A stretch of DNA of 64,000 nt, from positions 1 through 64,000 of IMG/VR virus record IMGVR_UViG_3300026521_000471, one strand, 5' to 3'. Position 1 is the first letter of the stretch; every line of letters starts with the position of its first letter. Of the stretch, positions 11,082-43,682 are shown piece after piece. A program made the position numbers and the translations under genes. The notes under the pieces are model-generated. The model saw nothing but the letters and a program-made list of their open reading frames with translations, was not told where the DNA came from and did not search any database.

Positions 11082-12120
11082 ATGACAAAAGAGGAATTAT
11101 TAAAAAGAAGAAAGGAAATTAAGTCCCAGATGTGGGATATTGAGAAAATATTAAAAGATAAGACATTCGTATCATCAGTTGACTTCGCTTCCATAAACTA
11201 ATGTGGCTTCTCTTGGTAACAAGGGAATGAAACAGAGTGTAAACTGCTGGAAACCCCTAAAGCTCGATTTCCTATTTTTAAAATAGGTGTGAGAACAGAA
11301 ACAATTATCGAGATGACTTAAAAGTGGAAACAGATTTGGGTTGGGTTAATTAAGTTTAACTAAAAATGGGCAATCAGCATCCAAGCTCTCTACCGGTTAG
11401 ATTAATACGTGAGTATTATTAAAGAGAGAAGGTTCAGAGACTATAATCACTCAGTCCTTAATTAAATTTGAAGGATTATTGTATAGTCCAGCGAAAAAAA
11501 TAATTACTAATTATTTCTGTGAAAGCAGATATTTTCGTAGGTACCCGAGCGTGATACGCCTCCTTAATGCCTCTATTGAAAATTTAGTTGGGTTTTTAGA
11601 TAATGACCCAATTGCATATAGAAAATTAGGGCTATCTAAAACTGTTAAGAAAGCAAAAGATATTTCAAAAGAACTAGTACGAACTGATTTACGGGAAAGT
11701 GATTATGTTAAATTTGTAGGTAAGAATGAAGATAAAATTTCATTACGTTTAGATTTATATAATGGAAAATATGCTGAGGCTGATATTACAGAAATTACAG
11801 AAACACCATTTGAACGATATTTTTTAGCAATATTATTTGGTGATGATGAGCAACTATTTAAGTTTCAAGATCAGACTTATACTGCTCAAGAATTTCAGGC
11901 TTTTCTTAAAGAGAATAATTTAAGTTTAAGTGGTAGTGGAGCAATCTATAAAGCCTATAAAATGGGTGATGATAAGAATAACCAAGGTATTATTCCTAGT
12001 TATTTAGAATACCTATTTTTGGAGCGAAAAAAAGTGAAGAAGGTGATGTTTACGCATTACCGACATAAAATTTTATTACAAAAATTTAAAAATGCTATGG
12101 AAGAAGATGGAAGATGGTAA
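11082..12120 (+). CDS. family B DNA polymerase middle fragment, two exons: join(11082..11194,11541..12120), 230 aa
   Basis: AGGAG RBS; splicing restores motif A FVSSVDFASMYPSVIRLLN; GIIPSYLEYLFLERKKVKK is the pre-motif-B fingers helix; no exonuclease, motif B or motif C in this ORF. Confidence 0.85.
11195..11540 (+). ncRNA. group I intron (346 nt, no ORF) in PolB motif A
   Basis: Exon-terminal U in P1 (CCAU/GUGG, U.G), terminal G, P3 GAGTG/CACTC, P4 TGCTG/CAGCA, GTTCAGAGACTA and ATAGTCC (P7); removal restores frame and motif. Confidence 0.92.
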
Positions 12121-12130
12121 GGGTTAAAAA

Positions 12131-12460
12131 TTGTTTCAAGAAGATGAAGAAGATTTATCTATATTAGAATTTTATAAACGTTTACCATATAATAAAATGA
12201 AAGAATGTGAAATTTTTATAACACCTGAGAAAATATATGGTATTCAATATGCTGATGATGCAGATACACGTATTTTGGCGGAATCATTAAATATTCTCAA
12301 AACATTAAAATCTAATGAGCTTAAAGACAAAATTGAACTCCATAGGACTGAGGGTGTATGGCGAGAGTTTTATACGTTCAAAAATGTAGTAAAAGCAATA
12401 AGAGAATATTTGCAGTTGCGACCAAATTTAATAGAAGAGTATCCAGAATGTATGATTTAA
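12131..12460 (+). CDS. small protein with PE-tail (YPECMI)
   Basis: Terminal motif. Confidence 0.7.
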   Translation: MFQEDEEDLSILEFYKRLPYNKMKECEIFITPEKIYGIQYADDADTRILAESLNILKTLKSNELKDKIELHRTEGVWREFYTFKNVVKAIREYLQLRPNLIEEYPECMI

Positions 12461-12690
12461 ACAATTTAAATAAAGGTGATATAATTGAATTTCAAATGTC
12501 CTTTGGAAAACTCCACGGTGTTATAGAAGTTAAAACAGAAGATTTAATACATGTTCGTAGTTTTTCTTTGGATAAAACTGCACATCGATGGTTTATGTTT
12601 TATCAAGAAACTTTTAAACATGTAAAAAATAATTATGGGGCTCAACTTGAAGACGACTTCATTACATCAAATCCTGAGAGGTTTATATGA
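12448..12690 (+). CDS. small protein with PE-tail (NPERFI); start moved from 12358 to ATG 12448
   Basis: GAAGAG upstream of 12448; avoids a long overlap. Confidence 0.65.
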   Translation: MYDLNNLNKGDIIEFQMSFGKLHGVIEVKTEDLIHVRSFSLDKTAHRWFMFYQETFKHVKNNYGAQLEDDFITSNPERFI

Positions 12691-12938
12691 AGAATATATA
12701 TGAAATAGCCAATGAATGTTATCCTATGTTATTAGTACACCCTGCAACAAACTGGGAACAGGAAATTCATAATTATAGAGCTCTAATTATCATAGAGATT
12801 TCAAAGCATTACCCTGATATTCTTGATAACTGTGAAGATTGCGTTAAAGTTATTCAAAATTCTGATGTACTAGAATATAAATTTAGTGATAAATTTATAA
12901 AACGGATTTTAGAAAAGTATCCTGAAGCATTAATATGA
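12687..12938 (+). CDS. small protein with PE-tail (YPEALI)
   Basis: Terminal motif; ATGA overlap. Confidence 0.7.
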   Translation: MKNIYEIANECYPMLLVHPATNWEQEIHNYRALIIIEISKHYPDILDNCEDCVKVIQNSDVLEYKFSDKFIKRILEKYPEALI

Positions 12939-13246
12939 AGTGTTCTGAAGAAGAAGCGATCGCTGTTAATTTTTTTAGAAAATTACCACCGGAAGTAAAG
13001 GTTGAAATTGATGAATATTTTTTACCTGAATTATCTGATGATACAAAAAATGCCCTTTTAAAAAATATTACTTTAATTGGTGAAGTTTTTAAAATGACAC
13101 CTAATTTAGCAGAATATTATACAAAATACGCTCAAGATTGTGATTACTTTCGATTGTTAGGATTTTGGGAAGAAATTAGTACTGTACTTGTAACTATATT
13201 TAATTCAACTGATTACTATGAAAGATACCCAGAATATTTGGTTTAA
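12935..13246 (+). CDS. small protein with PE-tail (YPEYLV)
   Basis: Terminal motif; ATGA overlap. Confidence 0.7.
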   Translation: MKCSEEEAIAVNFFRKLPPEVKVEIDEYFLPELSDDTKNALLKNITLIGEVFKMTPNLAEYYTKYAQDCDYFRLLGFWEEISTVLVTIFNSTDYYERYPEYLV

Positions 13247-13249
13247 ATG

Positions 13250-13257
13250 TATAAATA
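13250..13257 (+). promoter_or_regulatory. T4-like late promoter TATAAATA
   Basis: Exact T4 gp55 consensus 25 nt before 13283; chance matches are common in AT-rich DNA. Confidence 0.55.
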
Positions 13258-13282
13258 AATAAAAAATGAAAAGGTTAATAAT

Positions 13283-13657
13283 ATGAAATTAAATGATATT
13301 CTCTTTGAAAAAGAATTATCGGATTTAGCAAAAGAATTTGATCATGCCAAACAAGAATTAAAAAAAGATACAAATATAAGAATTACATTGGATGAAGTTA
13401 AACAATTTGTTAGAAAGTGGAAAAATTTTACTGATAAATTTGATATTACAAAAAAACGTATCTCTGTTATTAAAAAAACTGGGGATAAATTACTAAAATA
13501 TCTAAATTATAGAATTGATAAAATGGAAGAAGTAAAAACTATTGATAAAAGTGAGATTGAACCTCTTAGAAGTTATTTAGATGAATTAAAATTTGATATA
13601 GATTCACACATTGAAATACAACAAATAAAATATGATTCAACAGCTAGGAGAGTATAA
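13283..13657 (+). CDS. putative late helical protein, MKLNDILFE leader
   Basis: Late-type promoter, RBS, leader. Confidence 0.7.
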   Translation: MKLNDILFEKELSDLAKEFDHAKQELKKDTNIRITLDEVKQFVRKWKNFTDKFDITKKRISVIKKTGDKLLKYLNYRIDKMEEVKTIDKSEIEPLRSYLDELKFDIDSHIEIQQIKYDSTARRV

Positions 13658-14182
13658 ATGCAATTAGAAGATTTAAATAACGAATTACTATTAGAAAAAA
13701 CTTTTTATAAAATCAATAAAACCCTTAGTAAACATTTAGATAAACTGGAAGATGATGCGAGAGAAGTAAATTTGAATGTAGTTAATCTTTTAGTTAAAAA
13801 AGCAGAAAAGTTTTTGGATGATTTGGATGAAAAACTTAAAGATAAAAATGCTCCTATTCTTGAGTTAGACGACCTTATGGCAAAATATAAGAAACCTTTA
13901 CTTTTTTTCAAAAAACGTTTTGAAGATTTAGTTGATCAATATAGCGACAATGCATTTCAACGAGAAATAATGACTGAGGTTAGAATAATACTTACTAATT
14001 TAATAAATAGAATCGATTCAAGCCTAACTGGATTTGAAGGTGAAATTAAAAGAAAAATTAAAGCTACGGCACAAGAAGTATCTTCAGAAGTTACACAAAA
14101 AGGAAAAGGTATTAGAGTTCCACACGGTCTGGCACAGGATTTACATTCAAAAAAACATTATATTCATAAAGAGAAAAAATAA
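13658..14182 (+). CDS. putative late helical protein, MQLEDLNNELLLE leader
   Basis: AGGAG RBS; similar leader and composition to 13283. Confidence 0.7.
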   Translation: MQLEDLNNELLLEKTFYKINKTLSKHLDKLEDDAREVNLNVVNLLVKKAEKFLDDLDEKLKDKNAPILELDDLMAKYKKPLLFFKKRFEDLVDQYSDNAFQREIMTEVRIILTNLINRIDSSLTGFEGEIKRKIKATAQEVSSEVTQKGKGIRVPHGLAQDLHSKKHYIHKEKK

Positions 14183-14227
14183 TTTTTATTGTAAAATAAT
14201 TATAAAAGAATTAAGGGATTGAATTAA

Positions 14228-14611
14228 ATGACTCGTTATAATCTTGAGCTTGATAAAAAGCAATTAGAACTCATTATGAAATCGCTAGATTTTTATTCAA
14301 GAATACAAATGGGTCAAGTTTCAGAATTAGTTAATCCATTTGTACTACCTTTACCAGACGCTAATTATGATGATGTTGAAGAATTAATAATCGAATTAAA
14401 AAAAGCTATGTTTCCAAACTTAGATACCAATTCATACTATGCTATAAAATCAAATCATATACCTGATTCTACTCGTCAAATGATTGATATTATGGAAGTT
14501 ATACGATATAATTTAAATGATAAAAATGGTGATCGACCATATCAATGGTCAAATGAATTAGACGCCCCATCAATTACAAAAATAGGAGAAGATAATGAAA
14601 CTGCATCATAA
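14228..14611 (+). CDS. hypothetical phage protein
   Basis: ORF with RBS after TGTAAAAT at 14190. Confidence 0.65.
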   Translation: MTRYNLELDKKQLELIMKSLDFYSRIQMGQVSELVNPFVLPLPDANYDDVEELIIELKKAMFPNLDTNSYYAIKSNHIPDSTRQMIDIMEVIRYNLNDKNGDRPYQWSNELDAPSITKIGEDNETAS

Positions 14612-15035
14612 AACATTAGCAAAAATTGAGAAACTTTTTAGTATAAGTTTATCATATACCGAGACACAAGAAGAACAGTATAACACATACCCCGATATGA
14701 TGTTTATTATAGAATCTTATGTCGATTTTGTTTCATCATTAAAATTTAGATTGAAAAACAAAGAAGATTATACTCAGGAAAATTACCATGATGAAATCTA
14801 TGAATATGATTCAATGATTAGTGCATGGAGAGAACATTTAGTTTATCAATTGCCAGATGAAAATAATGAAAATCATAATGATTTATACTCTGTTTTATTC
14901 TCAACTTTACAAGCTGTTGACTCTTTAATTGATGATGATCATTTTTATTGGGAAGAAGATGAATCTAATGAAATAGATCTTCAAGATACTGACGAATCTT
15001 CTTCTGAAGAATTTGAGTTAGATAGAACATTCTAA
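14595..15035 (+). CDS. hypothetical acidic protein
   Basis: AGGAG RBS. Confidence 0.65.
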   Translation: MKLHHKTLAKIEKLFSISLSYTETQEEQYNTYPDMMFIIESYVDFVSSLKFRLKNKEDYTQENYHDEIYEYDSMISAWREHLVYQLPDENNENHNDLYSVLFSTLQAVDSLIDDDHFYWEEDESNEIDLQDTDESSSEEFELDRTF

Positions 15036-15041
15036 CTCAAA

Positions 15042-16229
15042 TTATTTCTTTCTCAGTTTATTTTTTAATTCTTCTATTTGCTTAATTTTTTTCTCAGTAA
15101 TATCTTGTTTGATTGAAATATAACCAATCTTTACCCCATCTTTATCATAATATGGTGAAATCACATTATTTGACCAATAAGCACCACCATTTTTCTTTTT
15201 AGATTTAATTTCTCCTACCCAGTTTTTATCCGCTTCAATAGTTTCCCATAATTTCTTAAAAACATTTGCATTCATATCCGGATGTCTTATAATATTATGT
15301 GGTTCGCCTAATAATTCTGTTTTTGAATAGCCTGTTGTTTTACAAAAAGCTGATGATACATCTACAATTACTCCAAATAAATTCGTCTTGGTAAATATGA
15401 CATGTTTTTCAAAATCAGAATGCATACTAGTTAGTTGTGTATTAAGAATATCATTTTGTGTCATTAAGTCCGAAAAATCTTTGCTGTATTCATCGGCGAT
15501 TTTTTCATTTTCAAAATCAGCCCTTTCTTTTATTTTAATCATTGAATATATATAAATTATTCCAGAAATAAGCATGATCATAGAGACAATGAATAAAACA
15601 AATAACTGTAAATGTTTAATATTATCATTAATATCATTTATTGGTATCGTAGCTTCAGTAACCCCTCTAGCATCCCCTATTTTCCATTTAAAATCCCAAG
15701 TCTTTAACGGGTGGTGATTATGGCATTGGACACAAGATTTATTAGTCATATATTCGGTTTTCGCATACGTTAGATAATCTGTCCCGTCCTTTTCCGTTCT
15801 TAAAAATAGTTCCTTATGACCCTTTATATTTTTTAAGACCTTCAGCTGTAATTTTGTCAGAACTCTATCAGATTGATTTTTAAATGGAAAATTACTATAA
15901 ACAGATATACGTAAATTTGGATCGTCTATCATTGAAGCTACATCATGCATAAATGTTGCAGGATACGGTATTGTATTATTATCTTTATGTTCTGTACTAA
16001 ATTTTATACCATTAATATTATATATATCATCAACTACGTATTTGGCATAGTATTCTTTCGTTTTTAAAAGTAGATTTACTACTGATTTAGTTTTATCTTC
16101 TGCTAAATCAACTGCATATTCATGCATTTTATATGGAATAAAGACGTAAAGTGATATTAATGTAACAATATAAGATATAGTCACTCCAATTAAAAATTTA
16201 TTAGAAAACATTTGTAAAATATTTTTCAT
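15042..16229 (-). CDS. membrane sensor: periplasmic c-type heme domain (DUF3365/Tll0287-like) plus cytoplasmic PAS, no output domain
   Basis: TM helix, IPYPATF, YSNFPFKN, CVQCH (CxxCH), WKIGDARG, TM helix, PAS (HNIIRHPDM...LWETI...WVGEIKS); start at ATG 16229 after GAGGGA. Confidence 0.85.
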   Translation of the reverse strand: MKNILQMFSNKFLIGVTISYIVTLISLYVFIPYKMHEYAVDLAEDKTKSVVNLLLKTKEYYAKYVVDDIYNINGIKFSTEHKDNNTIPYPATFMHDVASMIDDPNLRISVYSNFPFKNQSDRVLTKLQLKVLKNIKGHKELFLRTEKDGTDYLTYAKTEYMTNKSCVQCHNHHPLKTWDFKWKIGDARGVTEATIPINDINDNIKHLQLFVLFIVSMIMLISGIIYIYSMIKIKERADFENEKIADEYSKDFSDLMTQNDILNTQLTSMHSDFEKHVIFTKTNLFGVIVDVSSAFCKTTGYSKTELLGEPHNIIRHPDMNANVFKKLWETIEADKNWVGEIKSKKKNGGAYWSNNVISPYYDKDGVKIGYISIKQDITEKKIKQIEELKNKLRKK

Positions 16230-16293
16230 AAGTCCCTCAGTTTGTTGATTTATCAACTTATTTATTTTCGGATTTACTTTCTTTAATTTATGA

Positions 16294-16315
16294 TTAAGGT
16301 CTAATATAATATAAT
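16294..16315 (+). promoter_or_regulatory. class I promoter TTAAG-N11-TATAAT
   Basis: Motif match upstream of 16338. Confidence 0.65.
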
Positions 16316-16337
16316 ATAAAAAATTAAAAAAGGATAT

Positions 16338-16736
16338 ATGATGCATATACGTAGTTTAGATTATTTTGATAAAGTGGGTCTGGTAACAAGCGGACTCTCT
16401 ATTTTTATTTCAAGTATTTTTTTACTTATGAGTTTTAGTTATTTAACAGAGAATTATTTAGTTATTTTAGGGTTGGTAAGTATTTCTTTAGTCCTAAATA
16501 ATTACTACCTTACCATAACTACACCAGAAATATTTAAAAAGATTAATGATGATCCCTGGAAATTTATTTTAGAACAAAGACCTATACTCGGACCTATTGC
16601 CGTTTTATTAAGTTTTTTATTAATAGGGACATTAATTAGTGGTAATCTTTTTGCATGGCAAATATATATTATATATTTTATTATGCTTATGCTTATGAAT
16701 CATACCTATTCAAAAAAATATAAACTTAGAGATTAG
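16338..16736 (+). CDS. membrane protein (about 4 TM)
   Basis: Hydrophobic segments. Confidence 0.7.
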   Translation: MMHIRSLDYFDKVGLVTSGLSIFISSIFLLMSFSYLTENYLVILGLVSISLVLNNYYLTITTPEIFKKINDDPWKFILEQRPILGPIAVLLSFLLIGTLISGNLFAWQIYIIYFIMLMLMNHTYSKKYKLRD

Positions 16737-16737
16737 T

Positions 16738-17064
16738 ATGAAATTAAAGGATATTAATTATACTGGTATCTTTTTTAATGATGGTATGCATATGACTTGG
16801 AATTATGGATTACCTAGAAAATATCCTAGTAACATTCAATCTGGAGAGCTTGCAGAAGTTACTGTAATTGGGAAATATGAAGATGACCAAGTAGCGTGTT
16901 GGGTTGTTAAATATGGAAGATATACTCATCAACCGTCAGGAACTTTATTGCATGTTACTACTAAAGTTACTAATGGTGGTAAAGCTGTAATGAGTGGTCA
17001 AAGAGCAACAAAGAATGGTTATGAGAAAATTAAATCGTTTAAATTAAAAGGTGTATGGAGATGA
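16738..17064 (+). CDS. 2H phosphoesterase (cyclic phosphodiesterase-like)
   Basis: Two HxT motifs (HMT, HVT) followed by NGGKAVMSG; near the RNA ligase. Confidence 0.6.
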   Translation: MKLKDINYTGIFFNDGMHMTWNYGLPRKYPSNIQSGELAEVTVIGKYEDDQVACWVVKYGRYTHQPSGTLLHVTTKVTNGGKAVMSGQRATKNGYEKIKSFKLKGVWR

Positions 17065-17324
17065 ATTTAAAAAAGAGTGACATAGTCTTATTTAATTCTA
17101 ATATGTCTAATAATAAAATAGTTAAAACCACAGGTATTGTTATGGACAATGAAGATATTAATGGTATTATTAGTATTCAAGCTGTTGATGAAGTTGGAAG
17201 TATACGTTCTATTTTTGGAGCCTTTACATCGAATCCAACGGACATCCATAAGAGAAATATTATATCAGTCTTGGGTAATCTAAATGATTTAGTCATAGAA
17301 AAATTCCCTGAATATACAATTTGA
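17055..17324 (+). CDS. small protein with PE-tail (FPEYTI)
   Basis: Terminal motif. Confidence 0.7.
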   Translation: MEMNLKKSDIVLFNSNMSNNKIVKTTGIVMDNEDINGIISIQAVDEVGSIRSIFGAFTSNPTDIHKRNIISVLGNLNDLVIEKFPEYTI

Positions 17325-17337
17325 AAGGTAGGTACAA

Positions 17338-17721
17338 ATGGCACAACAAATAATTATGAGTGAAGATGGACAAGAAGATTTAAATAAAATAAGAGATGTT
17401 TATTTTGATTTAATGAATTATGGTATAATGCATGAAGATACAATTAATTCCATAGAAGAAGCATTCTTAACTTTGGTTACGAGAGATTTAGGAGCAGGTG
17501 GATTGACACTTGAAATGAACGAATCAGAGGATGAATATACTGATGCTTCAGAATTTCTTATAGATAACTACGGGTATTATGGTGTGTTTGAAGTTTTAAG
17601 TTTAGAAGATAATGAAACTCAACAAAAATATGCAAATTATCTTAGAGATATTTTTGCACTTGTTCTATATTCAGACAAATATTTGAATACAGAGGAAATT
17701 ATAGAAAAAATAGAGAGGTAG
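17338..17721 (+). CDS. hypothetical acidic protein
   Basis: ORF with RBS. Confidence 0.65.
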   Translation: MAQQIIMSEDGQEDLNKIRDVYFDLMNYGIMHEDTINSIEEAFLTLVTRDLGAGGLTLEMNESEDEYTDASEFLIDNYGYYGVFEVLSLEDNETQQKYANYLRDIFALVLYSDKYLNTEEIIEKIER

Positions 17722-17727
17722 AACGTT

Positions 17728-18390: not shown

Positions 18391-18635
18391 GTGCATCGGA
18401 CTACTTAGATCCAGAAATTAAAGATTTTGTTAGAGGGTATTCTAGAATAAATGTTGAATTAAAAAGAATACCTCCTAAGCTTTTAAAAACTAAGTTGGTT
18501 TCTTCATATGAGTCTGTTTCTTCAGCATCATATTTAGGTGATATTGAAAAAAATAATATGTTATGGTGTATAACTCAAGCTATTGAGGAATTGCATAATG
18601 AGATTTCAGAAGTTTATCCAGAGATTTGTATATGA
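18387..18635 (+). CDS. small protein with PE-tail (YPEICI)
   Basis: Terminal motif. Confidence 0.7.
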   Translation: MSASDYLDPEIKDFVRGYSRINVELKRIPPKLLKTKLVSSYESVSSASYLGDIEKNNMLWCITQAIEELHNEISEVYPEICI

Positions 18636-26841: not shown

Positions 26842-28137
26842 GTGGAAAATATTGATATAGGTATTATTGATGTAGAATCTTTAAAAACCTTAAATAAAAT
26901 TTTAGAATCAAAAAAAGAATATATTATAAATTATTGGCTAGATGATGAAAAACTCAAGCCAATTTTTGAGATGTTGGAAATAGAAAAAGAAACATTTAAA
27001 AGCAAATACGCATATCATATTTTTCATCATTTTCAATCCATTGATTATGATAATATGTATTTTAAAACATATATCGATGAAATGGAAGACAAACAGCATT
27101 TAATAAAATATTTTTACCGATTAATCGCTCATCTAAAGAATAAGATTATATTATTTTTAATACAGTATAACATAGATAACAATGATAAAATATTTATGGA
27201 TGATTCACTGCTATATACGATTGATAATGCTATATCTGAATTATTAGATTCTATAACAAAACATCTTCAAAGAGATTATACTGCAAATACAAAAAAATTA
27301 AAGATATTAGAAAATGCTGCATTAGTTACTAGAACTGATAAAGACGGTAGCATATTATTTATGAGCCCACCATTATTAGAGTTACTAGGATATTCAGAAG
27401 AGGAAATGCTTGGAGCAGGTTTTAATAAAATCAGACATCCCAGAGTTTCTTCTAAATTTTATGAAAAACTATGGAGGACATTAAAATCTGGTAAACCTTT
27501 CAAAGGGACTATTAAAAATTTAACTAAGAATAGAAAAGAAGTAATATTTCATACACAAATTGTTCCTGATTTTAATTTTGATGGAGAAATAGTTGGTTAT
27601 ACAGCTATAAAAACAGATTTAACCGATAAAACAAGAGCAAGAACTGACACATTAACAGGTCTTTTAAATCGTTCAGCATTTAATGATCGATTATCTGAAC
27701 TTATAGATAGATATAACAATTTTCATATTCCAGTTTCTTTAATAATGATTGATATTGATTATTTTAGTGAAGTAAATAATAACTACGGTCATATTACTGG
27801 TGATAAAACTCTAAAACATTTTGTTAAACTAATTAAAGAGATAATTAGACCTACTGATACATTTGCAAGATGGGGAGGGGAAGAATTTATTATAATTCAA
27901 AATAATACATTAGATAATTCTATTAAAACTGCTGAAAGAATAAGAAAACATATAGCAGAAAGCACGTTCCCAGAAGTAGGACAAAAAACATGTAGTCTAG
28001 GTGTGGCAGAATTTAATAATAGTTATGCAGATATAGATTCATTTATAAATGAACTTGATAAAGCATTATATTATTCAAAAGAACATGGACGTAATAAGGT
28101 CTCATACGTAGTTAAAAATGGTATAGAATCTGTTTAA
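26842..28137 (+). CDS. PAS-GGDEF diguanylate cyclase
   Basis: PAS (FNKIRHP...LWRTL), DTLTGLLNR, DIDYFSEVNNNYGHITGD, I-site RPTD, active site RWGGEEF. Confidence 0.93.
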   Translation: MENIDIGIIDVESLKTLNKILESKKEYIINYWLDDEKLKPIFEMLEIEKETFKSKYAYHIFHHFQSIDYDNMYFKTYIDEMEDKQHLIKYFYRLIAHLKNKIILFLIQYNIDNNDKIFMDDSLLYTIDNAISELLDSITKHLQRDYTANTKKLKILENAALVTRTDKDGSILFMSPPLLELLGYSEEEMLGAGFNKIRHPRVSSKFYEKLWRTLKSGKPFKGTIKNLTKNRKEVIFHTQIVPDFNFDGEIVGYTAIKTDLTDKTRARTDTLTGLLNRSAFNDRLSELIDRYNNFHIPVSLIMIDIDYFSEVNNNYGHITGDKTLKHFVKLIKEIIRPTDTFARWGGEEFIIIQNNTLDNSIKTAERIRKHIAESTFPEVGQKTCSLGVAEFNNSYADIDSFINELDKALYYSKEHGRNKVSYVVKNGIESV

Positions 28138-35415: not shown

Positions 35416-35424
35416 GACTTTGAT

Positions 35425-35607: not shown

Positions 35608-35614
35608 ATTTCCT

Positions 35615-35635
35615 TTAAGGTTATTATGGTATAAT
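35615..35635 (+). promoter_or_regulatory. class I promoter variant TTAAG-N10-TATAAT
   Basis: Spacer one base shorter, extended TG. Confidence 0.6.
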
Positions 35636-35665
35636 TATAGTAATCAAAGAAAAAAAGGTGAAATT

Positions 35666-35986: not shown

Positions 35987-35995
35987 GGATTAAAA

Positions 35996-36766: not shown

Positions 36767-36784
36767 GTTAGTATTCGATATAAT
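36763..36784 (+). promoter_or_regulatory. class I promoter TTAAG-N11-TATAAT
   Basis: Motif match. Confidence 0.7.
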
Positions 36785-36813
36785 AACAGAAGAAATCTAA
36801 AAGGATTAGTATA

Positions 36814-38268
36814 ATGAATGAAAATGATGTTAAAGAAGAAATTAAAGAAGCTTGGAAAGATTTAAAAAACGGTACAAAAGTTAAAGCTAAGCTTACTGAA
36901 AAAATGGATGAGAAGCTCGACGGTTTAGTAGCAGCAGCAAAAGCTGGAAATTGGAAAACTCAGCTGGAAGAAGCAATAGTACAGATGATTACTTATAATT
37001 ATTCAAGTAATGAAAGTTTAATGTGGTATGGACATTTAGTAACTCAATGTGAAATAAAAAGAGATTTAACTATGCCAAGTCCTGCTGGGGTAAGATTTAT
37101 GTTTAATAAATACGAGATGTTTATTAATCCTTTACTTTTTGGTTTATATTCAACCGATGAACAAATTGCTATATTGAAACATGAAATGTTACATATTATC
37201 AATTTGCACATTGTAAGACAAAAAGATAGAGACCATAAAAAATGGAATTATGGTACTGATTTATCTATCAACCAATTAATCCCAAACATTCCTGAAGATG
37301 GATTACAACCTGAAAAATTTGATTTTGCAAAAAACCTTAATGCAGAACAGTATTATGATATGATACCTACAAACTATGAGAGTGAAGAACCTCAAGAAGG
37401 TAATGAAGACGGTGAGGGTGGTGGAAGTTGTTCTGCACAAGGTTCCGGAGATGGAGAGCCACAAGATGGTGATGGTTCTGGAAACGGTGATGGTTCTGAT
37501 GTAATTGATGATGAGAAAAAACTTAAAGATCTAATCTCCCAAGCATTAAATGCAGCTCAAGAAGGAATGATTGGTGATCATGGTAAGTGGCAAAATTCTG
37601 AAGGTGATGAACAGGCCGCAAAAGAAATTACAAGACAGATGTGTGAAACAGCTACTAATAAATCCAGAGGTATGACACCAGGTGAAGTAGAAGGAGCAAT
37701 CCAATTACTTAAAATGCAGGAGCAAATTAACTGGAAGAAAGAGCTGAGAAGAATTGTTGGTAATAGAAAAGCATTTTCTAAACTTACAATTAAGAAAAAT
37801 GATAGAAGATTTCCAGGTCGTAAGGATTTAAGAGGTAAAACAAAAGATCATACAAAAGATATTGTAGTTATCTTAGATGTATCGGGTTCTATGAGTGATG
37901 AGGAAGTTCTCTATGGTTTAAATGAAATTAAGGCTATTGCAGAAAAAGCTAGAGCTGGGGTTACTATTATTCAAGTTGATACAGAGCCAAAAATTGTAGA
38001 AGATTTTGATCCAAAAGCAAAAACTTTTAATCGTAGAGGTTATGGTGGTACTTATATGACTCCTGGAATTGAAATGATTAAGGAACAGAAATTAAAATGT
38101 GACTGTATTTTGTGTATAACTGATGGTTACATTGAATCAACTTTTGATATTGATTTACCAAGAGTACCATTTATTTTCTTAGTTACACAAGATGCAGATA
38201 ATTTATCTATTGATGTAGGTTCATATCCGAGAATGAAAAAACATACATTGAAAATTGGTGATAAGTAG
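36814..38268 (+). CDS. DUF2201-type HExxH metallopeptidase plus VWA domain protein
   Basis: LKHEMLHI, WNYGTDLSIN, G/D-rich linker, MIDAS DVSGS, GYGGT, TDGY. Confidence 0.9.
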   Translation: MNENDVKEEIKEAWKDLKNGTKVKAKLTEKMDEKLDGLVAAAKAGNWKTQLEEAIVQMITYNYSSNESLMWYGHLVTQCEIKRDLTMPSPAGVRFMFNKYEMFINPLLFGLYSTDEQIAILKHEMLHIINLHIVRQKDRDHKKWNYGTDLSINQLIPNIPEDGLQPEKFDFAKNLNAEQYYDMIPTNYESEEPQEGNEDGEGGGSCSAQGSGDGEPQDGDGSGNGDGSDVIDDEKKLKDLISQALNAAQEGMIGDHGKWQNSEGDEQAAKEITRQMCETATNKSRGMTPGEVEGAIQLLKMQEQINWKKELRRIVGNRKAFSKLTIKKNDRRFPGRKDLRGKTKDHTKDIVVILDVSGSMSDEEVLYGLNEIKAIAEKARAGVTIIQVDTEPKIVEDFDPKAKTFNRRGYGGTYMTPGIEMIKEQKLKCDCILCITDGYIESTFDIDLPRVPFIFLVTQDADNLSIDVGSYPRMKKHTLKIGDK

Positions 38269-38524
38269 AGTTATTATGTGGGCTTATAAGTTTACAGATT
38301 CAAGAGGAAATGATTACTATGAGTTTCCTTTTGAAATATCTAGTTCAACATTTCTTAATTCAAATGAATATCAAATAGTAAATACTGAAAGAGAAGCTGT
38401 TAAAGAATTTAAAAAAGCAATTGATTTCAATATACCATATAAAGCTCATTATGAAGATATGCAAAAACTTAATAAAGAATTGGCTAAATTATATCTTAAA
38501 AAGTATCCGGAGATATTTATATAA
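38255..38524 (+). CDS. small protein with PE-tail (YPEIFI)
   Basis: Terminal motif. Confidence 0.7.
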   Translation: MVISRVIMWAYKFTDSRGNDYYEFPFEISSSTFLNSNEYQIVNTEREAVKEFKKAIDFNIPYKAHYEDMQKLNKELAKLYLKKYPEIFI

Positions 38525-38865
38525 TGTATCATTTTAAATTAAAACTTAGAGATATTCACAAAAATGCGTATAGATCATTTTTATTTCCAGAAAAAGCACC
38601 TAAAAATTCTACTAGTCATTGTGCGAAAATCAATTCGTTATATACAGAAGGTTGGTTTGCTGATAAATCATTGATAGAATCTGAAATCCACTTTATTAAA
38701 TCTGTTAAATTTTTTTTAAATGGTGCAATTAAAGATTTAAAGAAAAATAACACTTATACAGGGTGGGATGAATCATATCTTAAAGATGATGTTGCATTTT
38801 TAGAAAATGTATGGAAATTAACAATTCAAAAATATGCGGATAAATATCCGGAGCTAGTATTATGA
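38524..38865 (+). CDS. small protein with PE-tail (YPELVL)
   Basis: Terminal motif; TAATG overlap. Confidence 0.7.
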   Translation: MYHFKLKLRDIHKNAYRSFLFPEKAPKNSTSHCAKINSLYTEGWFADKSLIESEIHFIKSVKFFLNGAIKDLKKNNTYTGWDESYLKDDVAFLENVWKLTIQKYADKYPELVL

Positions 38866-39101
38866 GTTTTATCAAATTCACATTTAAAAATAACAGCTAT
38901 GCTATAGGACGTTTATTTTCAAAGATTGGAAAAGATAACTGGGCAAATATTGAAATAGTTAAGCCGTATAATGGTAGAAATGAGACTTTAAAAAAATATT
39001 ATACTAAGGGTAGAACATTTCAAGCTGATACATCTAGTACTTCAGATTATGTTAAAACTGCATTTATAGATCCAAAGTCTCACCCAGAATATTTTATTTA
39101 A
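38862..39101 (+). CDS. small protein with PE-tail (HPEYFI)
   Basis: Terminal motif; ATGA overlap. Confidence 0.7.
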   Translation: MSFIKFTFKNNSYAIGRLFSKIGKDNWANIEIVKPYNGRNETLKKYYTKGRTFQADTSSTSDYVKTAFIDPKSHPEYFI

Positions 39102-39106
39102 AAAGG

Positions 39107-39469
39107 TTGTTGATGTATTTCTCATATCAAGCACATACTTTAGATGGAAAATCTCTTAAAATTTATTTACCATTACCAACTAAAAAATCACAATATGAAG
39201 ATAGACTGAAATTTTATAAACAAATAGATGATAGAAAATTATATGTCGTGAAAGATACTAAAGATATTATTAGAGAATGTCATATACATAATACTTTAAA
39301 AGAATCAATAAATTATATAAGAAAAGATCTAATATATTCGATTGAATGGATAAGTGATGATAAAAATGCACCTCCTGGTAATCCTGATGTTTATGTGGCT
39401 AAATGTAGAGATGCTTTAACTGAATTAGAAAATAAATATATCAATAAATTCCCGGAGATATTCTTATGA
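39107..39469 (+). CDS. small protein with PE-tail (FPEIFL)
   Basis: Terminal motif. Confidence 0.7.
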   Translation: MLMYFSYQAHTLDGKSLKIYLPLPTKKSQYEDRLKFYKQIDDRKLYVVKDTKDIIRECHIHNTLKESINYIRKDLIYSIEWISDDKNAPPGNPDVYVAKCRDALTELENKYINKFPEIFL

Positions 39470-39654
39470 TTGTAGATGTAGATAAAAAGGCAATCCAACA
39501 ACAAATAAAGTTTTTAGTTAAAATAATAAACCAATATCAAAAAAGATTAGAAACTGAACCTCAATTTTTAACTAGAGAAGTTGAAGAAAATTTAGAAAGA
39601 GCTAAAGCAAAATATGATTATATTATTAAAGAATATCCAGACTTAATCATCTAG
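39466..39654 (+). CDS. small protein with PE-tail (YPDLII)
   Basis: Terminal motif; ATGA overlap. Confidence 0.7.
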   Translation: MIVDVDKKAIQQQIKFLVKIINQYQKRLETEPQFLTREVEENLERAKAKYDYIIKEYPDLII

Positions 39655-41301
39655 ACTATTTTTTAAATCTAATATATTACCGAATGATTTTTTATGAGTT
39701 ATTTGAGCAAAAATATTTTTCATATCATTACCTGAAAGATGACCTCGTTCTGCTTCTCTCATTAAATTTTTTGTTATTTTAAACTCGCCATTATATTTAA
39801 ATAATTCAAATGCTAAATTTATAATATGACCTTGTATTTGTAACGTATTAGAAGCACTAGCATATCCAAATTCTCTGGCTACTGCAATAATTTTTTTCAT
39901 GTTTTGTGGCATATTCCAAATACTAAAAAGCTTCTCAACAGCGTGTAAATTATTAAATCCTAATAGATTCATTTCTAAACTAGTTATAGATTTTGACGAT
40001 TTTTGTAAATTTTTAAAACGATCTACTCTCTCATTAATAATTAAAGCCTGATTTGTCAGGAGCATACCTAGTGGTAATATATGCATAACAGCAGTTAAAT
40101 CATCTTTATCATCTTGGGGTATATCTATAAATTTAATCCATTCTGAAACAAATTTAACTCGGTATTTTGAAACTTCAATTAACTCTTCTAATGAAATATC
40201 ATATGCGTCTAAATATAAACTGTCAAATGTTTCGTTAGCTACCTCTGTTATTGCTAATGCCCCTATTTGTTTTTTACCTAGTAATGATACAGCAATAGAG
40301 ATTTTTGATACTCGATTTGGTAGGCCTATATACGGGGAATTAATTTCCCGTAAAATAATTGCTGAGAACATTGGATCTTGTTCAACAACTTTTACTATTT
40401 GGTTGATATTTGAATTGCTATCAAAACACAATTCTTTTAACTTAGTTAATGTACTAGGTAAAGGTTCAATTGCTTCAGCTAGTTCAACTAATGTAATCTG
40501 CCCTTTATTAATAGGTATTTCAATCTCCGTATTACTACGTTCATATTTTTTAACAATCATAGTCTTAAAATCAGCCATTTTCATATTATGTGTATTATAA
40601 ACATTTTCGATTGCTAATTTTTCTTTAACTAAGTTTAAAGAACTTTCTTTACTGAATTTACTCAAAACATATAAATTTTCAAAATCGAATTCAATATCAT
40701 TTAAACAAACTATGAGATCTATGATATGCCCATCGGGGTATTTTAAATCAGTTATTAAAATTTTTTTACCGGGCATTTTTATAAGGTCAATTGCCTCGGA
40801 TTTAGTAGAAACACTATCCACAAATTTAAATTTTGTACTAAGAATTTCTGTTAATAATTTTGATACTTTTGGATCTCGATTAAGGATCACAATATCATAA
40901 TATTCATTAAGTTTTGGGGAAGTGTAATTTTTACATTGAACGATTGGCGCAGTATCAAATTCAATAGCATAAAATTCTGGATCTTCATGTTGTTGAATTT
41001 GAGTTACCCACCTTTCAATTTGAATAGAAAAGTTTTCAAACCAATTAATCACATCTTGATTAAAAGCACAAGTATAATTTTTTATAAAAAACAAAATATC
41101 TTCTGTTTTTTCAAGGAGAATAGAAATTTCTTCAAATTTATGATAGTAAGTAATAGCTTTTAATGAATGTATCGACCTAAATAATGTGTCGATCAATTTT
41201 GATGAATTAATTTCATCATTTCTAAAATCAATAATAGTGTTATTAATAATTATAGACAAATTATCTAATCTTATAATATAATCTTCAAGTTCTTCAGTCA
41301 T
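39643..41301 (-). CDS. Hpt + receiver-like + HDOD signalling protein
   Basis: CheA-P1-like LFRSIHSLKA; REC-like ILITDLKYPDG; HDOD PLPSTL...VEQDPMFSAIILREINSP...AVSLLG...WNMP. Confidence 0.85.
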   Translation of the reverse strand: MTEELEDYIIRLDNLSIIINNTIIDFRNDEINSSKLIDTLFRSIHSLKAITYYHKFEEISILLEKTEDILFFIKNYTCAFNQDVINWFENFSIQIERWVTQIQQHEDPEFYAIEFDTAPIVQCKNYTSPKLNEYYDIVILNRDPKVSKLLTEILSTKFKFVDSVSTKSEAIDLIKMPGKKILITDLKYPDGHIIDLIVCLNDIEFDFENLYVLSKFSKESSLNLVKEKLAIENVYNTHNMKMADFKTMIVKKYERSNTEIEIPINKGQITLVELAEAIEPLPSTLTKLKELCFDSNSNINQIVKVVEQDPMFSAIILREINSPYIGLPNRVSKISIAVSLLGKKQIGALAITEVANETFDSLYLDAYDISLEELIEVSKYRVKFVSEWIKFIDIPQDDKDDLTAVMHILPLGMLLTNQALIINERVDRFKNLQKSSKSITSLEMNLLGFNNLHAVEKLFSIWNMPQNMKKIIAVAREFGYASASNTLQIQGHIINLAFELFKYNGEFKITKNLMREAERGHLSGNDMKNIFAQITHKKSFGNILDLKNSLDD

Positions 41302-41469
41302 TACATTAAAAACCTATTTTAATTTTATTTATAATGAATATGCAATATTTTCCCAGTCAATGTCATTCCATGTCAAATACATTTTACCCTCCTATTTTTG
41401 GTATCTATAAAATATTTATATTAATTATAATATATTTTAAGCAAAAATCTGATTAAATTTTAAGCAAAA

Positions 41470-42027
41470 TTATTTACGTTTCATTATAATTTGCCCTTTA
41501 ACATTAACTAATGATTTTTTTCTAGTTAATTTATGCTCCCTTATAAAAATTTTAGAACGATATTCATAAGCATTATAAATTTCATCTCCAATTTTCAAAC
41601 TTATAAGTTGTTCTCTATAAAGTGATGCTAATCGTTCATCTGTTATATTCCATATTTCACCAAAATGAGCAAGTCGTACTCTTTCAGCAAGTACTTGAAA
41701 ATCATCAATACTAATATTTTTCTTTTTTAATTCTTCTTCTTTTTCTGGAGTAATTACAAATCTTTTATTTTTATCTTCATGAAAAACTAACTTAGTGTAT
41801 GCTGGATATTTTACAGCATCAACTTTTGTATGACCAAATCGTAATATCGGTTGTTTATTTTTAAAACGTTCAATATAGTCAATATCCATAAGATGCCAGG
41901 TATTTTGATGTTCAAAATTTGGATATGAAATAGCAATAAGTGACCACTCTTTTTTATCATGATATTTATAAAATTCATTCTTTAATTCGAGAAGTATTTC
42001 GTTTAAATTATGATAATATTCATTCAT
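41470..42027 (-). CDS. hypothetical protein
   Basis: AAGGGA RBS; TATAAATA at 42051-42058 (minus). Confidence 0.65.
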   Translation of the reverse strand: MNEYYHNLNEILLELKNEFYKYHDKKEWSLIAISYPNFEHQNTWHLMDIDYIERFKNKQPILRFGHTKVDAVKYPAYTKLVFHEDKNKRFVITPEKEEELKKKNISIDDFQVLAERVRLAHFGEIWNITDERLASLYREQLISLKIGDEIYNAYEYRSKIFIREHKLTRKKSLVNVKGQIIMKRK

Positions 42028-42065
42028 ATATTTCCCTTTTTATTTTAAATTATTTATATTTTTTT

Positions 42066-42073
42066 TGTAAAAT
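42066..42073 (+). promoter_or_regulatory. class II motif TGTAAAAT upstream of tuf
   Basis: Same 8-mer precedes the polB fragment, parM-like, PRTase, SSB and others. Confidence 0.5.
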
Positions 42074-42109
42074 ATAATATACCAAAAAAATTAAATTTAA
42101 GGATGAAAT

Positions 42110-43682
42110 ATGGCAAAAGAGAAATTTGTTAGGGGTGAAAAACCTCATGTTAATGTGGGAACAGTAGGGCATAGACTATGTGCCATCTCTTGGTAACAAG
42201 GGATTAAAAAGAGTTTAAATTGTCTGGAAACCCCTAAAGCTTCTTTTACTAAAACAGAGCCAGAAATGGCATATGGTATAGTTAATGAAAATTAGAAAGA
42301 AAAAAGAAGATGGAATATGTGGAAACGCTAAGTTCTTTATAATGGGCAATCAGCAGCCAAGTTACCTAACTCAAATATATTGAGATTTCTATGTGAATAG
42401 AATTTAAGGTAGAAGGTTCAGAGACTGTAATAACTCAGTCCGTTAATCTTAATTGAATTTCGGATTATGGTACAGTCCAGACTACAACAACTTTACTTAG
42501 TTAGTTGGCTTATGAAAGTAAGTGTAGTAATTGGTAGATCATGGCAAGACTACTTTAACTGCAGCAATTACAGCAGTAATGGCAGTTAAAAACGGTGCAG
42601 CATTTATGGATTACGATCAAATCGATAATGCACCAGAAGAAAGAGAAAGAGGTATCACTATTGCTACTTCTCATGTTGAATATGAAACTGATAAAAGACA
42701 TTATGCTCATGTTGATTGTCCAGGTCACGCAGATTATGTTAAAAATATGATTACTGGTGCTGCACAAATGGATGGTGCTATTCTTGTTATTGCTGCTACT
42801 GATGGACCTATGGCTCAAACGAGAGAACATATCCTTCTTTCAAAACAAGTTGGTGTACCAGCAATTGTTGTTTTTATGAACAAAGAGGACCAACTTGATG
42901 ATGAAGATAAAGATGAAATGGCTGAACTTGTAGAAATGGAGATTAGAGAACTTCTTGACCAATACGGTTTTGATGGTGATAACACTCCTGTTATTCTTGG
43001 TAGTGCATTTCAAGCTCTTGAAGAAGCAAAAACCGGTACTTTAGGTGAGTGGTCAGAAAAGATTGTACAACTTATGGATTCAGTAGATGAGTGGATTCCA
43101 GAACCAGTTAGAGATACTGATAAGGATTTCTTAATGCCTATTGAAGATGTATTCTCAATTGCAGGTAGAGGTACAGTTGTTACTGGTAAAATTGAGAGAG
43201 GTACAATCAAACTTGGTGAAACAGTAGAAATTGTAGGTATTAAAGACACTCAAACATCAACTGTTACAGGAATTGAGATGTTCCGTAAAGAGATGGAAGA
43301 AGGTTTAGCTGGGGATAATGCAGGTATTCTTCTAAGAGGAATTTCAAAAGATGATGTTGAAAGAGGTCAAGTTCTTTGTAAACCTGGTTCAATAACACCA
43401 CATACAAAGTTCAAAGCGGAAGTTTATGTTCTAAGTAAAGATGAGGGTGGTCGTCATACTCCATTCTTTAATAATTATAGACCTCAGTTCTATTTCTATA
43501 CATCTGATATTACTGGTGCAATTACACTAGAAGAAGGTGTTGAAATGGCTATGCCTGGTGATAATGTGACTATTACGGTAGAACTTATTGCTCCAATGGC
43601 TATCGAAAAAGGAACAACTTTTGCTATTAGAGAAGGTGGTAGAACTGTCGGCTCTGGTATGATTGGAGAAATTATCGAGTAA
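42110..43682 (+). CDS. tuf: elongation factor Tu, two exons: join(42110..42172,42534..43682), 403 aa
   Basis: Exon 1 [21 protein letters not shown] plus exon 2 VDHGKTT; [30 protein letters not shown]. Confidence 0.97.
42173..42533 (+). ncRNA. group I intron (361 nt, no ORF) in the tuf P-loop
   Basis: P1 GGCAU/GUGCC with U.G at the splice site; P10 CUAU/GUAG; GGGCAATCAGCAGCCAAG; GTTCAGAGACTG and ACAGTCC (P7); terminal G; removal restores GHVDHGKT. Confidence 0.95.

What the first reader, a model, noticed from the sequence alone, without database searches (positions are those of the whole stretch)
11195..42533. Two sister ORF-less introns in unrelated genes share the insertion site CAT^GTA
Seen: both introns share TCTCTTGGTAACAAGGGA, TGGAAACCCCTAAAGCT, AATGGGCAATCAGCA.CCAAG, AGAAGGTTCAGAGACT and GGATTAT.GTA.AGTCCAG, with divergent peripheral loops. 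Flanks are TCCAT|GTAC (polB) and GGCAT|GTAG (tuf), and each guide sequence compensates (GTGG versus GTGCC). Neither encodes a homing endonuclease. Inference: ectopic spread within one genome by guide-directed reverse splicing or a trans-acting nuclease.
Basis: partly seen in the sequence, partly recalled or inferred. Interest (0 to 1): 0.7.

Follow-up and report, generated by a model that had tools for sequence, protein, structure and literature searches.

The report
Two related, non-sister phage introns
A large phage from hydrothermal-vent samples carries two small self-splicing group I introns, one in a DNA-polymerase fragment and one in its own EF-Tu gene; they belong to one intron family that has colonised many gene sites in related phages, but they are not copies of each other.

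Summary
Window 11195-11540 (346 nt) and 42173-42533 (361 nt) are ORF-less group I introns. Removing them restores PolB motif A (DFAS-M-YPS) and the EF-Tu P-loop (GH|VDHGKT). Natural alleles that lack exactly these bases exist in related phage contigs (L253, L251). The flanks are CAT|GTA in both, and the guides GTGG and GTGCC pair with their own exons.

The interpretation does not hold as stated. The two introns are 66% identical. Each is 81-84% identical to an intron from another genome: the polB intron to polB-site introns of other phages (L254), the tuf intron to a tuf-site intron in a 496-kb relative (L273) and to L265_150 at a different site. An AU test rejects a polB+tuf clade (p 0.0002 and 0.005).

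Both introns belong to a family found at 12 or more sites, often several per gene. All sites end in T and have 4-5 bp covarying guides. CAT matches a GUG guide core carried by several members; GTA is not a family feature. The genome has only these two copies, no RT and no adjacent homing endonuclease. L273 has a free-standing HNH endonuclease gene beside its intron-bearing tuf. This is a new member of a known kind, since intron-rich huge phages are already described.

The parts
11082..11194 (+). Exon 1 of a stand-alone PolB-fragment gene; it ends inside the Met codon of motif A (DFAS-AT|G)
   Evidence: The spliced product equals the uninterrupted P0129.
11195..11540 (+). Group I intron 1, 346 nt, no ORF. 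Guide GTGG at 11203-11206, P2 hairpin at 11209-11226, 3'-terminal G at 11540.
   Evidence: RF00028 37.9 bits, E 6.5e-8. Exactly these bases are absent from the 99.9%-identical contig L253. Covariation is seen across the family. An RNA-library contig covers 11240-11382.
11541..12120 (+). Exon 2 of the PolB-fragment gene (YPSVIRLLNAS... to the stop codon)
   Evidence: phrog_262 DNA polymerase, E 1.3e-11 for the spliced protein.
42110..42172 (+). tuf exon 1 ([21 protein letters not shown])
42173..42533 (+). Group I intron 2, 361 nt, no ORF. Guide GTGCC at 42180-42184, P2 hairpin at 42186-42203, 3'-terminal G at 42533.
   Evidence: RF00028 27.1 bits, E 5.8e-6. Exactly these bases are absent from the related phage contig L251. 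The same site is occupied in L273. An RNA-library contig covers 42173-42389 and departs from the genome exactly at the 5' splice site.
42534..43682 (+). tuf exon 2 (VDHGKTT... to the stop codon); all three EF-Tu domains
   Evidence: PF00009, PF03144, PF03143. It is 81-82% identical to Campylobacterota EF-Tu.

Best explanation
Both elements are self-splicing group I ribozymes.

How each would splice (inferred from the sequence):
- The last 4-5 exon bases, ending in U, pair with an internal guide to form P1: CCAU with GUGG in the polB fragment, GGCAU with GUGCC in tuf.
- A guanosine would attack after that U, and the terminal G of the intron would mark the 3' site.
- Exon ligation restores the Met codon of PolB motif A and the His-Val junction of the EF-Tu P-loop.

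What they belong to (shown): a family of 270-360-nt ORF-less introns occupying at least a dozen different sites in essential genes of a clade of large, AT-rich phages. Samples are from hydrothermal-vent, epibiont and biofilm communities. The host is probably Campylobacterota, judged from EF-Tu similarity.

How the two relate (shown): they are family members but not copies of each other. Each belongs to a lineage tied to its own site, a polB-site lineage (this genome and L254) and a tuf-site lineage (this genome and L273).

How they spread (inferred):
- At an occupied site the intron is passed between co-infecting relatives at the DNA level. Both sites have alleles with and without the intron in closely related genomes.
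- In L273 a free-standing HNH-NUMOD3 homing endonuclease gene lies 210 bp upstream of the intron-bearing tuf. This is the layout known as collaborative homing.
- New sites are seeded rarely, most likely by reverse splicing. That needs only 4-5 nt of guide complementarity, which would explain why every site ends in U and every guide matches its own exon.

The shared site: the shared CAU reflects a GUG guide core carried by at least six family members. The shared GUA is probably coincidence.
For: Real introns:
- RF00028 matches.
- Exact intron-less alleles L253 and L251.
- 42 of 68 consensus base pairs carry compensatory changes across 12 family members.
- P1 of 4-5 bp in 17 of 18 members, 3 bp in L272_7841.
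- In RNA run X7 a contig matches 42173-42389 with 0 differences. It leaves the genome exactly at the 5' splice site, with G instead of the genomic T. Depth over exon 1 is zero. A polB-intron fragment is also present in that run.

Not sisters:
- Identities of 66% against 81-84%.
- Trees group by insertion site, and AU p is 0.0002 and 0.005.
- The 18-nt P2 string is also in L266 and L273.

Family with many sites and several copies per gene. L263 has four introns within 1.5 kb. L265, L258 and L259 have exons of 14 and 21 nt between two introns.

Only two copies in this genome.

The tuf intron is old in its site: ours and L273 are 82.7% identical in the intron and 83.3% in exon 2.

Nuclease context:
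- HNH-NUMOD3 gene beside tuf in L273.
- This genome has a truncated copy of the same HNH family at 90.3 kb and a GIY-YIG gene at 142.3 kb. It has no LAGLIDADG and no RT match.

Published background:
- Reverse splicing needs 4-6 complementary bases and has no direct proof (PMC3984707).
- Intron-rich huge phages with stand-alone endonucleases are described (PMC12880540).
Against: - No splicing assay was done. The RNA support is single assembled contigs from one library, and the non-genomic bases before the intron could come from library construction.
- Relatives were fetched with exact 15-21-nt patterns taken from these two introns. The sample is therefore biased and small (about 20 introns), and the deep nodes of the tree are unresolved.
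- For several family members I set the 5' boundary by P1 logic, so their P1 lengths are partly circular. The boundaries for polB, tuf, L254, L265, L258 and L260 are checked at the protein level.
- The endonuclease link rests on adjacency in one relative.
- Nothing here separates reverse splicing from a DNA-level route for reaching new sites.
- The record is linear and 85% complete, so further copies could lie in the missing part.
Confidence: 0.8

Rival explanations
1. One intron is a recent copy of the other, made inside this genome by guide-directed reverse splicing or a trans-acting nuclease. That is why the two share the site CAT|GTA.
For: They share the core and the P2 18-mer. They share 6 nt at the site, and the guides compensate. 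No other copies are in the genome.
Against: - 66% identity to each other against 81-84% to introns from other genomes.
- The AU test rejects the pair as a clade.
- The P5abc, P6 and P9 regions of the tuf intron match a different subgroup from those of the polB intron.
- The P2 18-mer also occurs in L266 and L273.
- The tuf intron has diverged in step with tuf between this genome and L273, so it did not arrive recently from the resident polB intron.
- No RT gene was found.
Confidence: 0.04
2. New sites are reached at the DNA level rather than by reverse splicing. A free-standing homing endonuclease with relaxed specificity, or illegitimate recombination, places an intron at a break. Only insertions whose flank happens to pair with the guide splice and survive, and the guide is then tuned by mutation.
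For: - Free-standing HNH and GIY-YIG homing endonuclease genes exist in this phage clade, one of them beside the intron-bearing tuf in L273.
- Three of the 8 differences between the intron-plus and intron-minus polB alleles lie within 100 nt of the site, as a DNA conversion tract would give.
- No RT was found.
- The 2014 review lists this as an alternative route (PMC3984707).
Against: - No endonuclease gene is adjacent to either intron in this genome.
- The two exon-2 variants also occur on an intron-plus allele in runs X1 and X4, so the tract signal is weak.
- Tandem introns separated by exons of only 14 and 21 nt are hard to reach with endonucleases that have long recognition sites.
Confidence: 0.3
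3. The two segments are not functional introns. They would be decayed insertions that split both genes, leaving pseudogenes or separately translated pieces.
For: Both score below the Rfam gathering threshold. The PolB of this clade is in any case encoded in separate pieces.
Against: - Intact P1, terminal G and core in both.
- Strong covariation across the family.
- Exons stay in frame at invariant catalytic motifs, and the exon sequences are conserved.
- The same sites are occupied in diverged relatives whose exons remain intact.
- An RNA contig ends at the 5' splice site.
Confidence: 0.03

Closest known systems
ORF-less group I introns of phages with multiple introns per genome or per gene (Staphylococcus phage Twort, T4-type td/nrdB/nrdD, SPO1-type polymerase introns; recalled from memory except for the blastn hits)
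   Same: Small self-splicing introns sit in conserved catalytic motifs of replication and nucleotide-metabolism genes, several per genome. They are patchily present among close relatives. The P7-P3-P8 core of intron 1 gives weak blastn hits to Twort-like Staphylococcus phages.
   Different: Sequence similarity is limited to 66 nt of the core (78.8% identity). Here one host gene is a phage-borne EF-Tu and the other a stand-alone PolB fragment. I did not find an intron in a tuf P-loop in the papers I searched, but the search was not exhaustive.
Group I introns of huge gut 'Jug' phages (PMC12880540)
   Same: Huge phages with many short ORF-less group I introns that split terL, nrdD and DNA polymerase genes. 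Stand-alone HNH and GIY-YIG endonucleases and inteins accompany them. Splicing was confirmed there from metatranscriptome reads.
   Different: Different phage clade, host and habitat (Bacteroides gut phages against vent phages of probable Campylobacterota). Their introns average 206 nt and 18.5 per genome; this genome has two introns of about 350 nt. Relatedness of the intron sequences was not tested.
Collaborative homing: an ORF-less intron plus a free-standing endonuclease that targets the intron insertion site (cyanophage S-PM2 psbA with F-CphI; Aeromonas phage Aeh1 nrdA with MobE; reviewed in PMC3984707)
   Same: In relative L273 a free-standing HNH-NUMOD3 endonuclease gene lies 210 bp from a tuf gene that carries the ORF-less intron. 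Intron-less tuf alleles exist in sister phages.
   Different: In the window's genome no endonuclease gene lies next to either intron. The only copy of that HNH family here is truncated and 48 kb away. Cleavage specificity is unknown.
Related rDNA group I introns at different sites, taken as evidence for spread by reverse splicing (Bhattacharya et al. 2005, cited in PMC3984707)
   Same: Homologous introns at different sites whose only common requirement is a short guide-complementary stretch ending in U.
   Different: Here the targets are protein-coding genes of phages, and there are many sites (12 or more) within one closely related intron family. Neighbouring introns can be separated by exons of only 14 and 21 nt.
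IStrons (group I intron fused to an IS200/605 element; PMC4227781)
   Same: A TnpB-only IS element lies 3 kb downstream of tuf (45714-47100).
   Different: That element contains no group I intron, and the introns contain no IS part. The IS moves independently: it is absent at this place in the otherwise 100%-identical contig L252.

Membership tests
Group I intron (Rfam RF00028) | Sequence and structure match to the catalytic core (P3-P9, with the P7 guanosine site) | tested here: inconclusive
   37.9 bits, E 6.5e-8 and 27.1 bits, E 5.8e-6. Both are full-length matches but below the gathering score of 50. They are missed altogether when 64 kb is scanned at once.
Group I intron (Rfam RF00028) | P1 helix between the 5' exon end and an internal guide, with U.G at the splice site; G as the last intron base | tested here: met
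   CCAU with GUGG, and GGCAU with GUGCC. Both introns end in G. Seventeen of the 18 family members examined have a 4-5-bp cognate P1; L272_7841 has 3 bp.
Group I intron (Rfam RF00028) | Helices supported by compensatory changes among homologues | tested here: met
   RNAalifold on 12 family members: 68 pairs, 42 with changes on both sides. P2, P5a-c, P6, P6a, P8 and P9 covary; P4, P5 and P7 are invariant. P3 is a pseudoknot and was not scored.
Group I intron (Rfam RF00028) | Precise removal restores the host gene | tested here: met
   Spliced products equal the uninterrupted natural proteins P0129 and P0011. Natural DNA alleles lack exactly 11195-11540 and 42173-42533.
Group I intron (Rfam RF00028) | Guanosine-dependent self-splicing | not testable with these tools
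   Only indirect evidence: an RNA-library contig starts at intron base 1, preceded by a non-genomic G.
Mobile group I intron with its own homing endonuclease | Endonuclease ORF inside the intron | tested here: not met
   The longest stop-free stretch is 50 aa and 44 aa. The introns are 346 and 361 nt.
Collaborative homing pair (ORF-less intron plus free-standing endonuclease) | Free-standing endonuclease gene next to the intron-bearing gene | tested here: not met
   Neighbours of both genes give no Pfam or PHROG endonuclease hit. The feature is met only in relative L273.
Collaborative homing pair (ORF-less intron plus free-standing endonuclease) | The endonuclease cuts the intron-less allele at or near the insertion site | not testable with these tools
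   Needs an enzyme assay.
IStron | Group I intron fused to IS200/605 ends and tnpB | tested here: not met
   The single tnpB (45833-47023) lies in a separate 1387-bp insertion with no intron match.

The most novel reading that the evidence does not exclude
This intron family may be a natural case of guide-directed reverse-splicing spread into protein-coding genes. It comprises closely related ORF-less ribozymes at a dozen or more sites that share only a 4-5-nt guide match, with tandem copies separated by exons of 14 and 21 nt. Site-specific lineages would then be fixed and passed between phages with the help of free-standing HNH endonucleases. If so, it offers many recent site changes on which the unproven reverse-splicing pathway could be tested directly. 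It also includes the first intron I know of in an EF-Tu P-loop.
Probability: 0.3. Interest if true: 0.6.

Novelty: new member of a known kind. Interest (0 to 1): 0.4.

Why it matters
The finding corrects an attractive but wrong reading: sharing a site and a core does not make two introns sisters. Comparison with other genomes shows site-specific lineages instead.

What remains is useful for three reasons.
- It is a compact ORF-less intron family occupying many different sites in essential phage genes.
- Alleles with and without the intron occur in near-identical genomes.
- In one relative a free-standing endonuclease gene sits beside the target gene.

The family could serve as a test bed for how endonuclease-less group I introns reach new sites, for which there is still no direct evidence (PMC3984707). 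It also shows that a phage-borne translation factor gene can be an intron host. For annotation, both genes are split in automated calls (213 aa and 383 aa ORFs) and should be joined.

Tried and rejected
- **Rfam scans.** At the gathering threshold nothing was found in the window. E-value scans of 45-64-kb chunks found no introns, not even the two known ones. Those negatives therefore carry no weight for other intron types.
- **The genome search with RF00028.** It reported only the tuf intron.
- **Third-intron candidate.** A core-like motif at genome 151039 (-) gave no Rfam match.
- **Exact 18-mer in IMG/VR.** The only hits were two chance matches inside coding sequence.
- **The 21-nt subfamily pattern.** It found nothing in IMG/VR but 16 loci in metagenome contigs.
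- **GenBank phages.** tblastn of polB exon 2 found nothing.
- **EF-Tu relatives in IMG/VR.** These were 69%-identical bacterial-type loci with uninterrupted tuf.
- **Reaching the polB locus of the L251 contig.** The record was not held.
- **PolB pieces.** The exonuclease piece was not found in this record by Pfam or by tblastn with the L243 protein. Canonical motifs B and C were not found by regular expression.
- **EF-Tu proteins with long N-termini (414-443 aa).** I checked them for hidden introns; only P0018 (L273) has one.
- **Covariance model.** I did not build one, because a model of about 300 positions would probably exceed the calibration limit. nhmmer profiles were used instead.
- **Co-conversion reading of the SNP cluster near the polB intron.** This was weakened by an intron-plus allele that carries the same exon variants.


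Full report
**Setting.** The window is the first 64 kb of a single 224,467-bp virus record from IMG/VR. The record is linear, estimated 85% complete, and about 27% G+C. It has many small genes on one strand. Outside the window it carries a tRNA array, a tmRNA and a GOLLD-like RNA. Its EF-Tu is 81-82% identical to that of Arcobacteraceae and other Campylobacterota. Sequencing runs that hold this DNA are hydrothermal-vent, epibiont and biofilm metagenomes.

**The observation.**
- Intron 1 is 11195-11540, with flanks TCCAT|GTACCC. Intron 2 is 42173-42533, with flanks GGGCAT|GTAGAT.
- The generic group I model matches both over its full length, at 37.9 and 27.1 bits. Both scores are below Rfam's threshold of 50.
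- Removing intron 2 gives a complete EF-Tu with an intact GHVDHGKT. Removing intron 1 gives VDFASMYPS, which is PolB motif A.
- Neither intron holds an open stretch longer than 50 codons.
- The guides GTGG and GTGCC pair with CCAU and GGCAU, with U.G at the splice site.

**Independent proof of the boundaries.**
- A 7.9-kb contig (L253) is 99.9% identical to window 6772-15060. It lacks exactly 11195-11540 and encodes the spliced 230-aa protein uninterrupted.
- A 221.5-kb syntenic phage contig (L251, 85-92% nucleotide identity) lacks exactly 42173-42533 and encodes a 403-aa EF-Tu.
- An 83-kb contig (L252) is 100% identical to the window and has the tuf intron.

Both introns are thus present in some closely related genomes and absent in others.

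**The host gene called polB.** It is a stand-alone 230-aa gene covering motif A and the first half of the fingers (phrog_262 positions 398-488 of 856). About 70 protein clusters of roughly 230 aa are homologous to it. In a relative, the exonuclease part is a separate 570-aa gene. In this record that part was not found. A 283-aa PolB-like protein with motif B- and C-like strings lies just outside the window, at genome 64573-65424.

**Are the two introns sisters?** No.
- *Finding relatives.* About 18 of the roughly 70 homologues of the PolB fragment are N-terminally short. Two of them (P0130, P0146) begin with a translation of the intron's 3' end. Contigs L254-L256 and L264 carry an intron at the same site, TCCAT|GTATCC. 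A metagenome scan with a 21-nt core pattern returned 14 further loci.
- *Identity over P1-P7'.* polB against tuf is 66%. polB against L254 is 81%, against L260_169 80%, against L265_546 78%. tuf against L265_150 is 81%, and tuf is 71-78% identical to twelve others.
- *A second tuf-site intron.* A 496-kb contig (L273) carries an intron at the same tuf site. It is 83-84% identical to ours, the same divergence as tuf exon 2 at 83.3%.
- *Trees.* ML trees pair polB with L254 (support 95/93) inside a four-member clade (100/99). They pair tuf with L273 (95/90), with L265_150 next (87/90).
- *Formal test.* The AU test rejects a polB+tuf clade. The log-likelihood difference is 74, with p 0.0002 on 19 rows and 0.005 on 20 rows.
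- *Peripheral domains.* The P5abc, P6 and P9 regions of the tuf intron are those of the large subgroup. The polB intron has a different P5abc, shared with L254, L260_169, L265_546 and L016.
- *The 18-nt P2 string.* It looked diagnostic of the pair, but it is also present in L266 and L273.

**The family.**
- Its members sit at many sites. The 5' flanks are CCAT, GCAT, ACAT, GGGT, GGCT, CGCT, CCTT, CACT, ATGT and GGAT. The guides that match them are GTGG, GTGCC, GTGTC, GCCC(T), GGCC, GGCG, GAGGC, GGTG, GCATC and GTCC.
- Where read, the 3' flanks are GTA, AAC, GGT, GAA, GCA, TTA and CTT.
- Several members lie in one gene. L263 has four within 1.5 kb of a terminase-like gene. L265, L258 and L259 have two, separated by exons of 14 and 21 nt. 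Some abut intein ends.
- Twelve members support a common fold, with compensatory changes at 42 of 68 pairs.

**The shared CAT|GTA.** CAT goes with a GUG guide core carried by at least six members from both subgroups: polB, L254, L260_169, tuf, L273 and L265_150. GTA at the 3' side is found only at the polB and tuf sites. It forms a 4-bp P10 with CUAU in the tuf intron but only 2 bp in the polB intron (my reading). With the 5' half explained by descent of the guide, the remaining three-base match has a chance probability of a few percent at this base composition. It was also noticed after the fact.

**Other copies and nucleases in this genome.**
- blastn, a two-sequence profile and a 19-sequence family profile find only the two copies.
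- No LAGLIDADG and no reverse transcriptase match was found.
- There is one Seg-like GIY-YIG/NUMOD3 gene at 142280-143017 and one truncated HNH gene at 90266-90613. Both are more than 48 kb from either intron.
- The truncated HNH is 72% identical to the first 72 residues of a full HNH-NUMOD3 endonuclease (phrog_655, E 1.7e-53). In L273 that gene lies 210 bp upstream of the intron-bearing tuf, on the opposite strand.
- A TnpB-only IS element sits at 45714-47100, 3 kb from tuf. It is an independent insertion, absent from the identical contig L252.

**RNA evidence.**
- In a biofilm metatranscriptome (X7) one contig matches 42173-42389 without a mismatch. It leaves the genome exactly at the 5' splice site, with ...GG in place of ...AT. 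Exon 1 has zero depth.
- A second contig covers 11240-11382 of the polB intron, again with no exon signal.
- This fits stable excised introns, and perhaps the added guanosine. It rests on single assembled contigs, and the extra bases could come from library construction.
- DNA runs X2 and X3 hold the tuf intron-plus allele.
- DNA runs X1 and X4 hold an intron-plus polB allele. It carries the same two exon-2 variants as intron-less L253.

**Mechanism.**
- *Shown:* the ribozyme architecture, exact intron-less alleles, lineages tied to insertion sites, and guide-exon covariation across sites.
- *Inferred:* self-splicing; transfer at a given site by DNA recombination between co-infecting phages, possibly triggered by a free-standing endonuclease as laid out in L273; and rare seeding of new sites by reverse splicing limited by the 4-5-nt guide.
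- *Alternative:* a DNA-level route to new sites cannot be excluded.
- *SNP cluster:* three of the eight differences between L253 and the window lie within 100 nt of the polB site. This hints at a conversion tract, but the X1/X4 haplotype weakens it.

**Comparison with what is known.** Multiple ORF-less group I introns in conserved motifs of phage replication genes, and their patchy distribution, are long known. Huge gut phages with on average 18.5 short group I introns per genome, stand-alone endonucleases and inteins have been described (PMC12880540). Collaborative homing and the unproven reverse-splicing route are reviewed in PMC3984707. This case is therefore a new member of a known kind. 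The new points are the host genes (a phage EF-Tu P-loop and a stand-alone PolB fragment) and the breadth of sites used by one closely related ORF-less family.

**Verdict.** The claim that the two introns are sisters produced within this genome is rejected. Family-level ectopic spread is plausible but unproven. Interest is moderate.

Noticed in passing
window 45714-47100: A 1387-bp TnpB-only IS200/605-type insertion (tnpB 45833-47023; PF07282, PF01385, PF12323). It lies directly after TTTATA with no target duplication. The otherwise 100%-identical contig L252 has the empty site. The relative L251 carries a 505-aa tnpB at a different place. This looks like a currently mobile element in this phage population.
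   Followed up: partly
L234:5784-6285 (genome about 69284-69785): A GOLLD RNA match at 110.7 bits, E 2.8e-28 (below the gathering score of 150), with an embedded tRNA at L234:5847-5916.
   Followed up: no
L234:6832-19985 and L235:1-759 (genome about 70.3-83.8 kb); L240:937-1318 (-) (genome about 181.4-181.8 kb): An array of about 25 tRNA genes and a full-length tmRNA (115.5 bits). With EF-Tu they make a sizeable translation-related gene set in a 224-kb phage.
   Followed up: no
window 26842-28137 (+), 39643-41301 (-), 15042-16346 (-): Phage-borne signalling genes: a PAS-GGDEF diguanylate cyclase, an HDOD-domain protein, and a Tll0287-like/PAS protein. They suggest interference with host c-di-GMP signalling.
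   Followed up: no
window 43739-44713: An Alp7A/ParM-like actin gene directly downstream of tuf. The tuf-alp pairing is conserved in L251, L252 and the 496-kb relative L273.
   Followed up: no
L001:1417-2268 (genome 64573-65424, just outside the window): A 283-aa PolB-like protein (PF00136, E 3.5e-8). It has motif B- and C-like strings and a motif A-like string that lacks the aspartate. Together with the 230-aa fragment, and a separate exonuclease gene in relatives, it suggests that the polymerase of this clade is encoded in pieces. The exonuclease piece was not found in this record.
   Followed up: partly
L245:1495-2232 (genome 142280-143017, +) and L244:1354-1701 (genome 90266-90613, -): A free-standing Seg-like GIY-YIG/NUMOD3 homing endonuclease (phrog_314, E 2e-45), and a truncated HNH endonuclease (phrog_655, E 4e-33) that lacks its DNA-binding part.
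   Followed up: partly
L263:2-1498 (-), L265:138-832 (-), L258:3405-3924, L259:8903-9632 (-): In other phage contigs, family members stand in tandem inside one gene: four in L263 and two each in L265, L258 and L259. Exons of only 14 and 21 nt lie between two introns, and some introns sit directly after intein ends (...SHN|T, ...THN|S).
   Followed up: partly
L016:10671-11002 (-) and L111: A more distant relative of the polB-type intron, sharing its P2 and P5abc. It sits in a primase-helicase gene after ...ILVGLD (site TGGAT|), in a 132-kb IMG/VR contig of higher G+C.
   Followed up: partly
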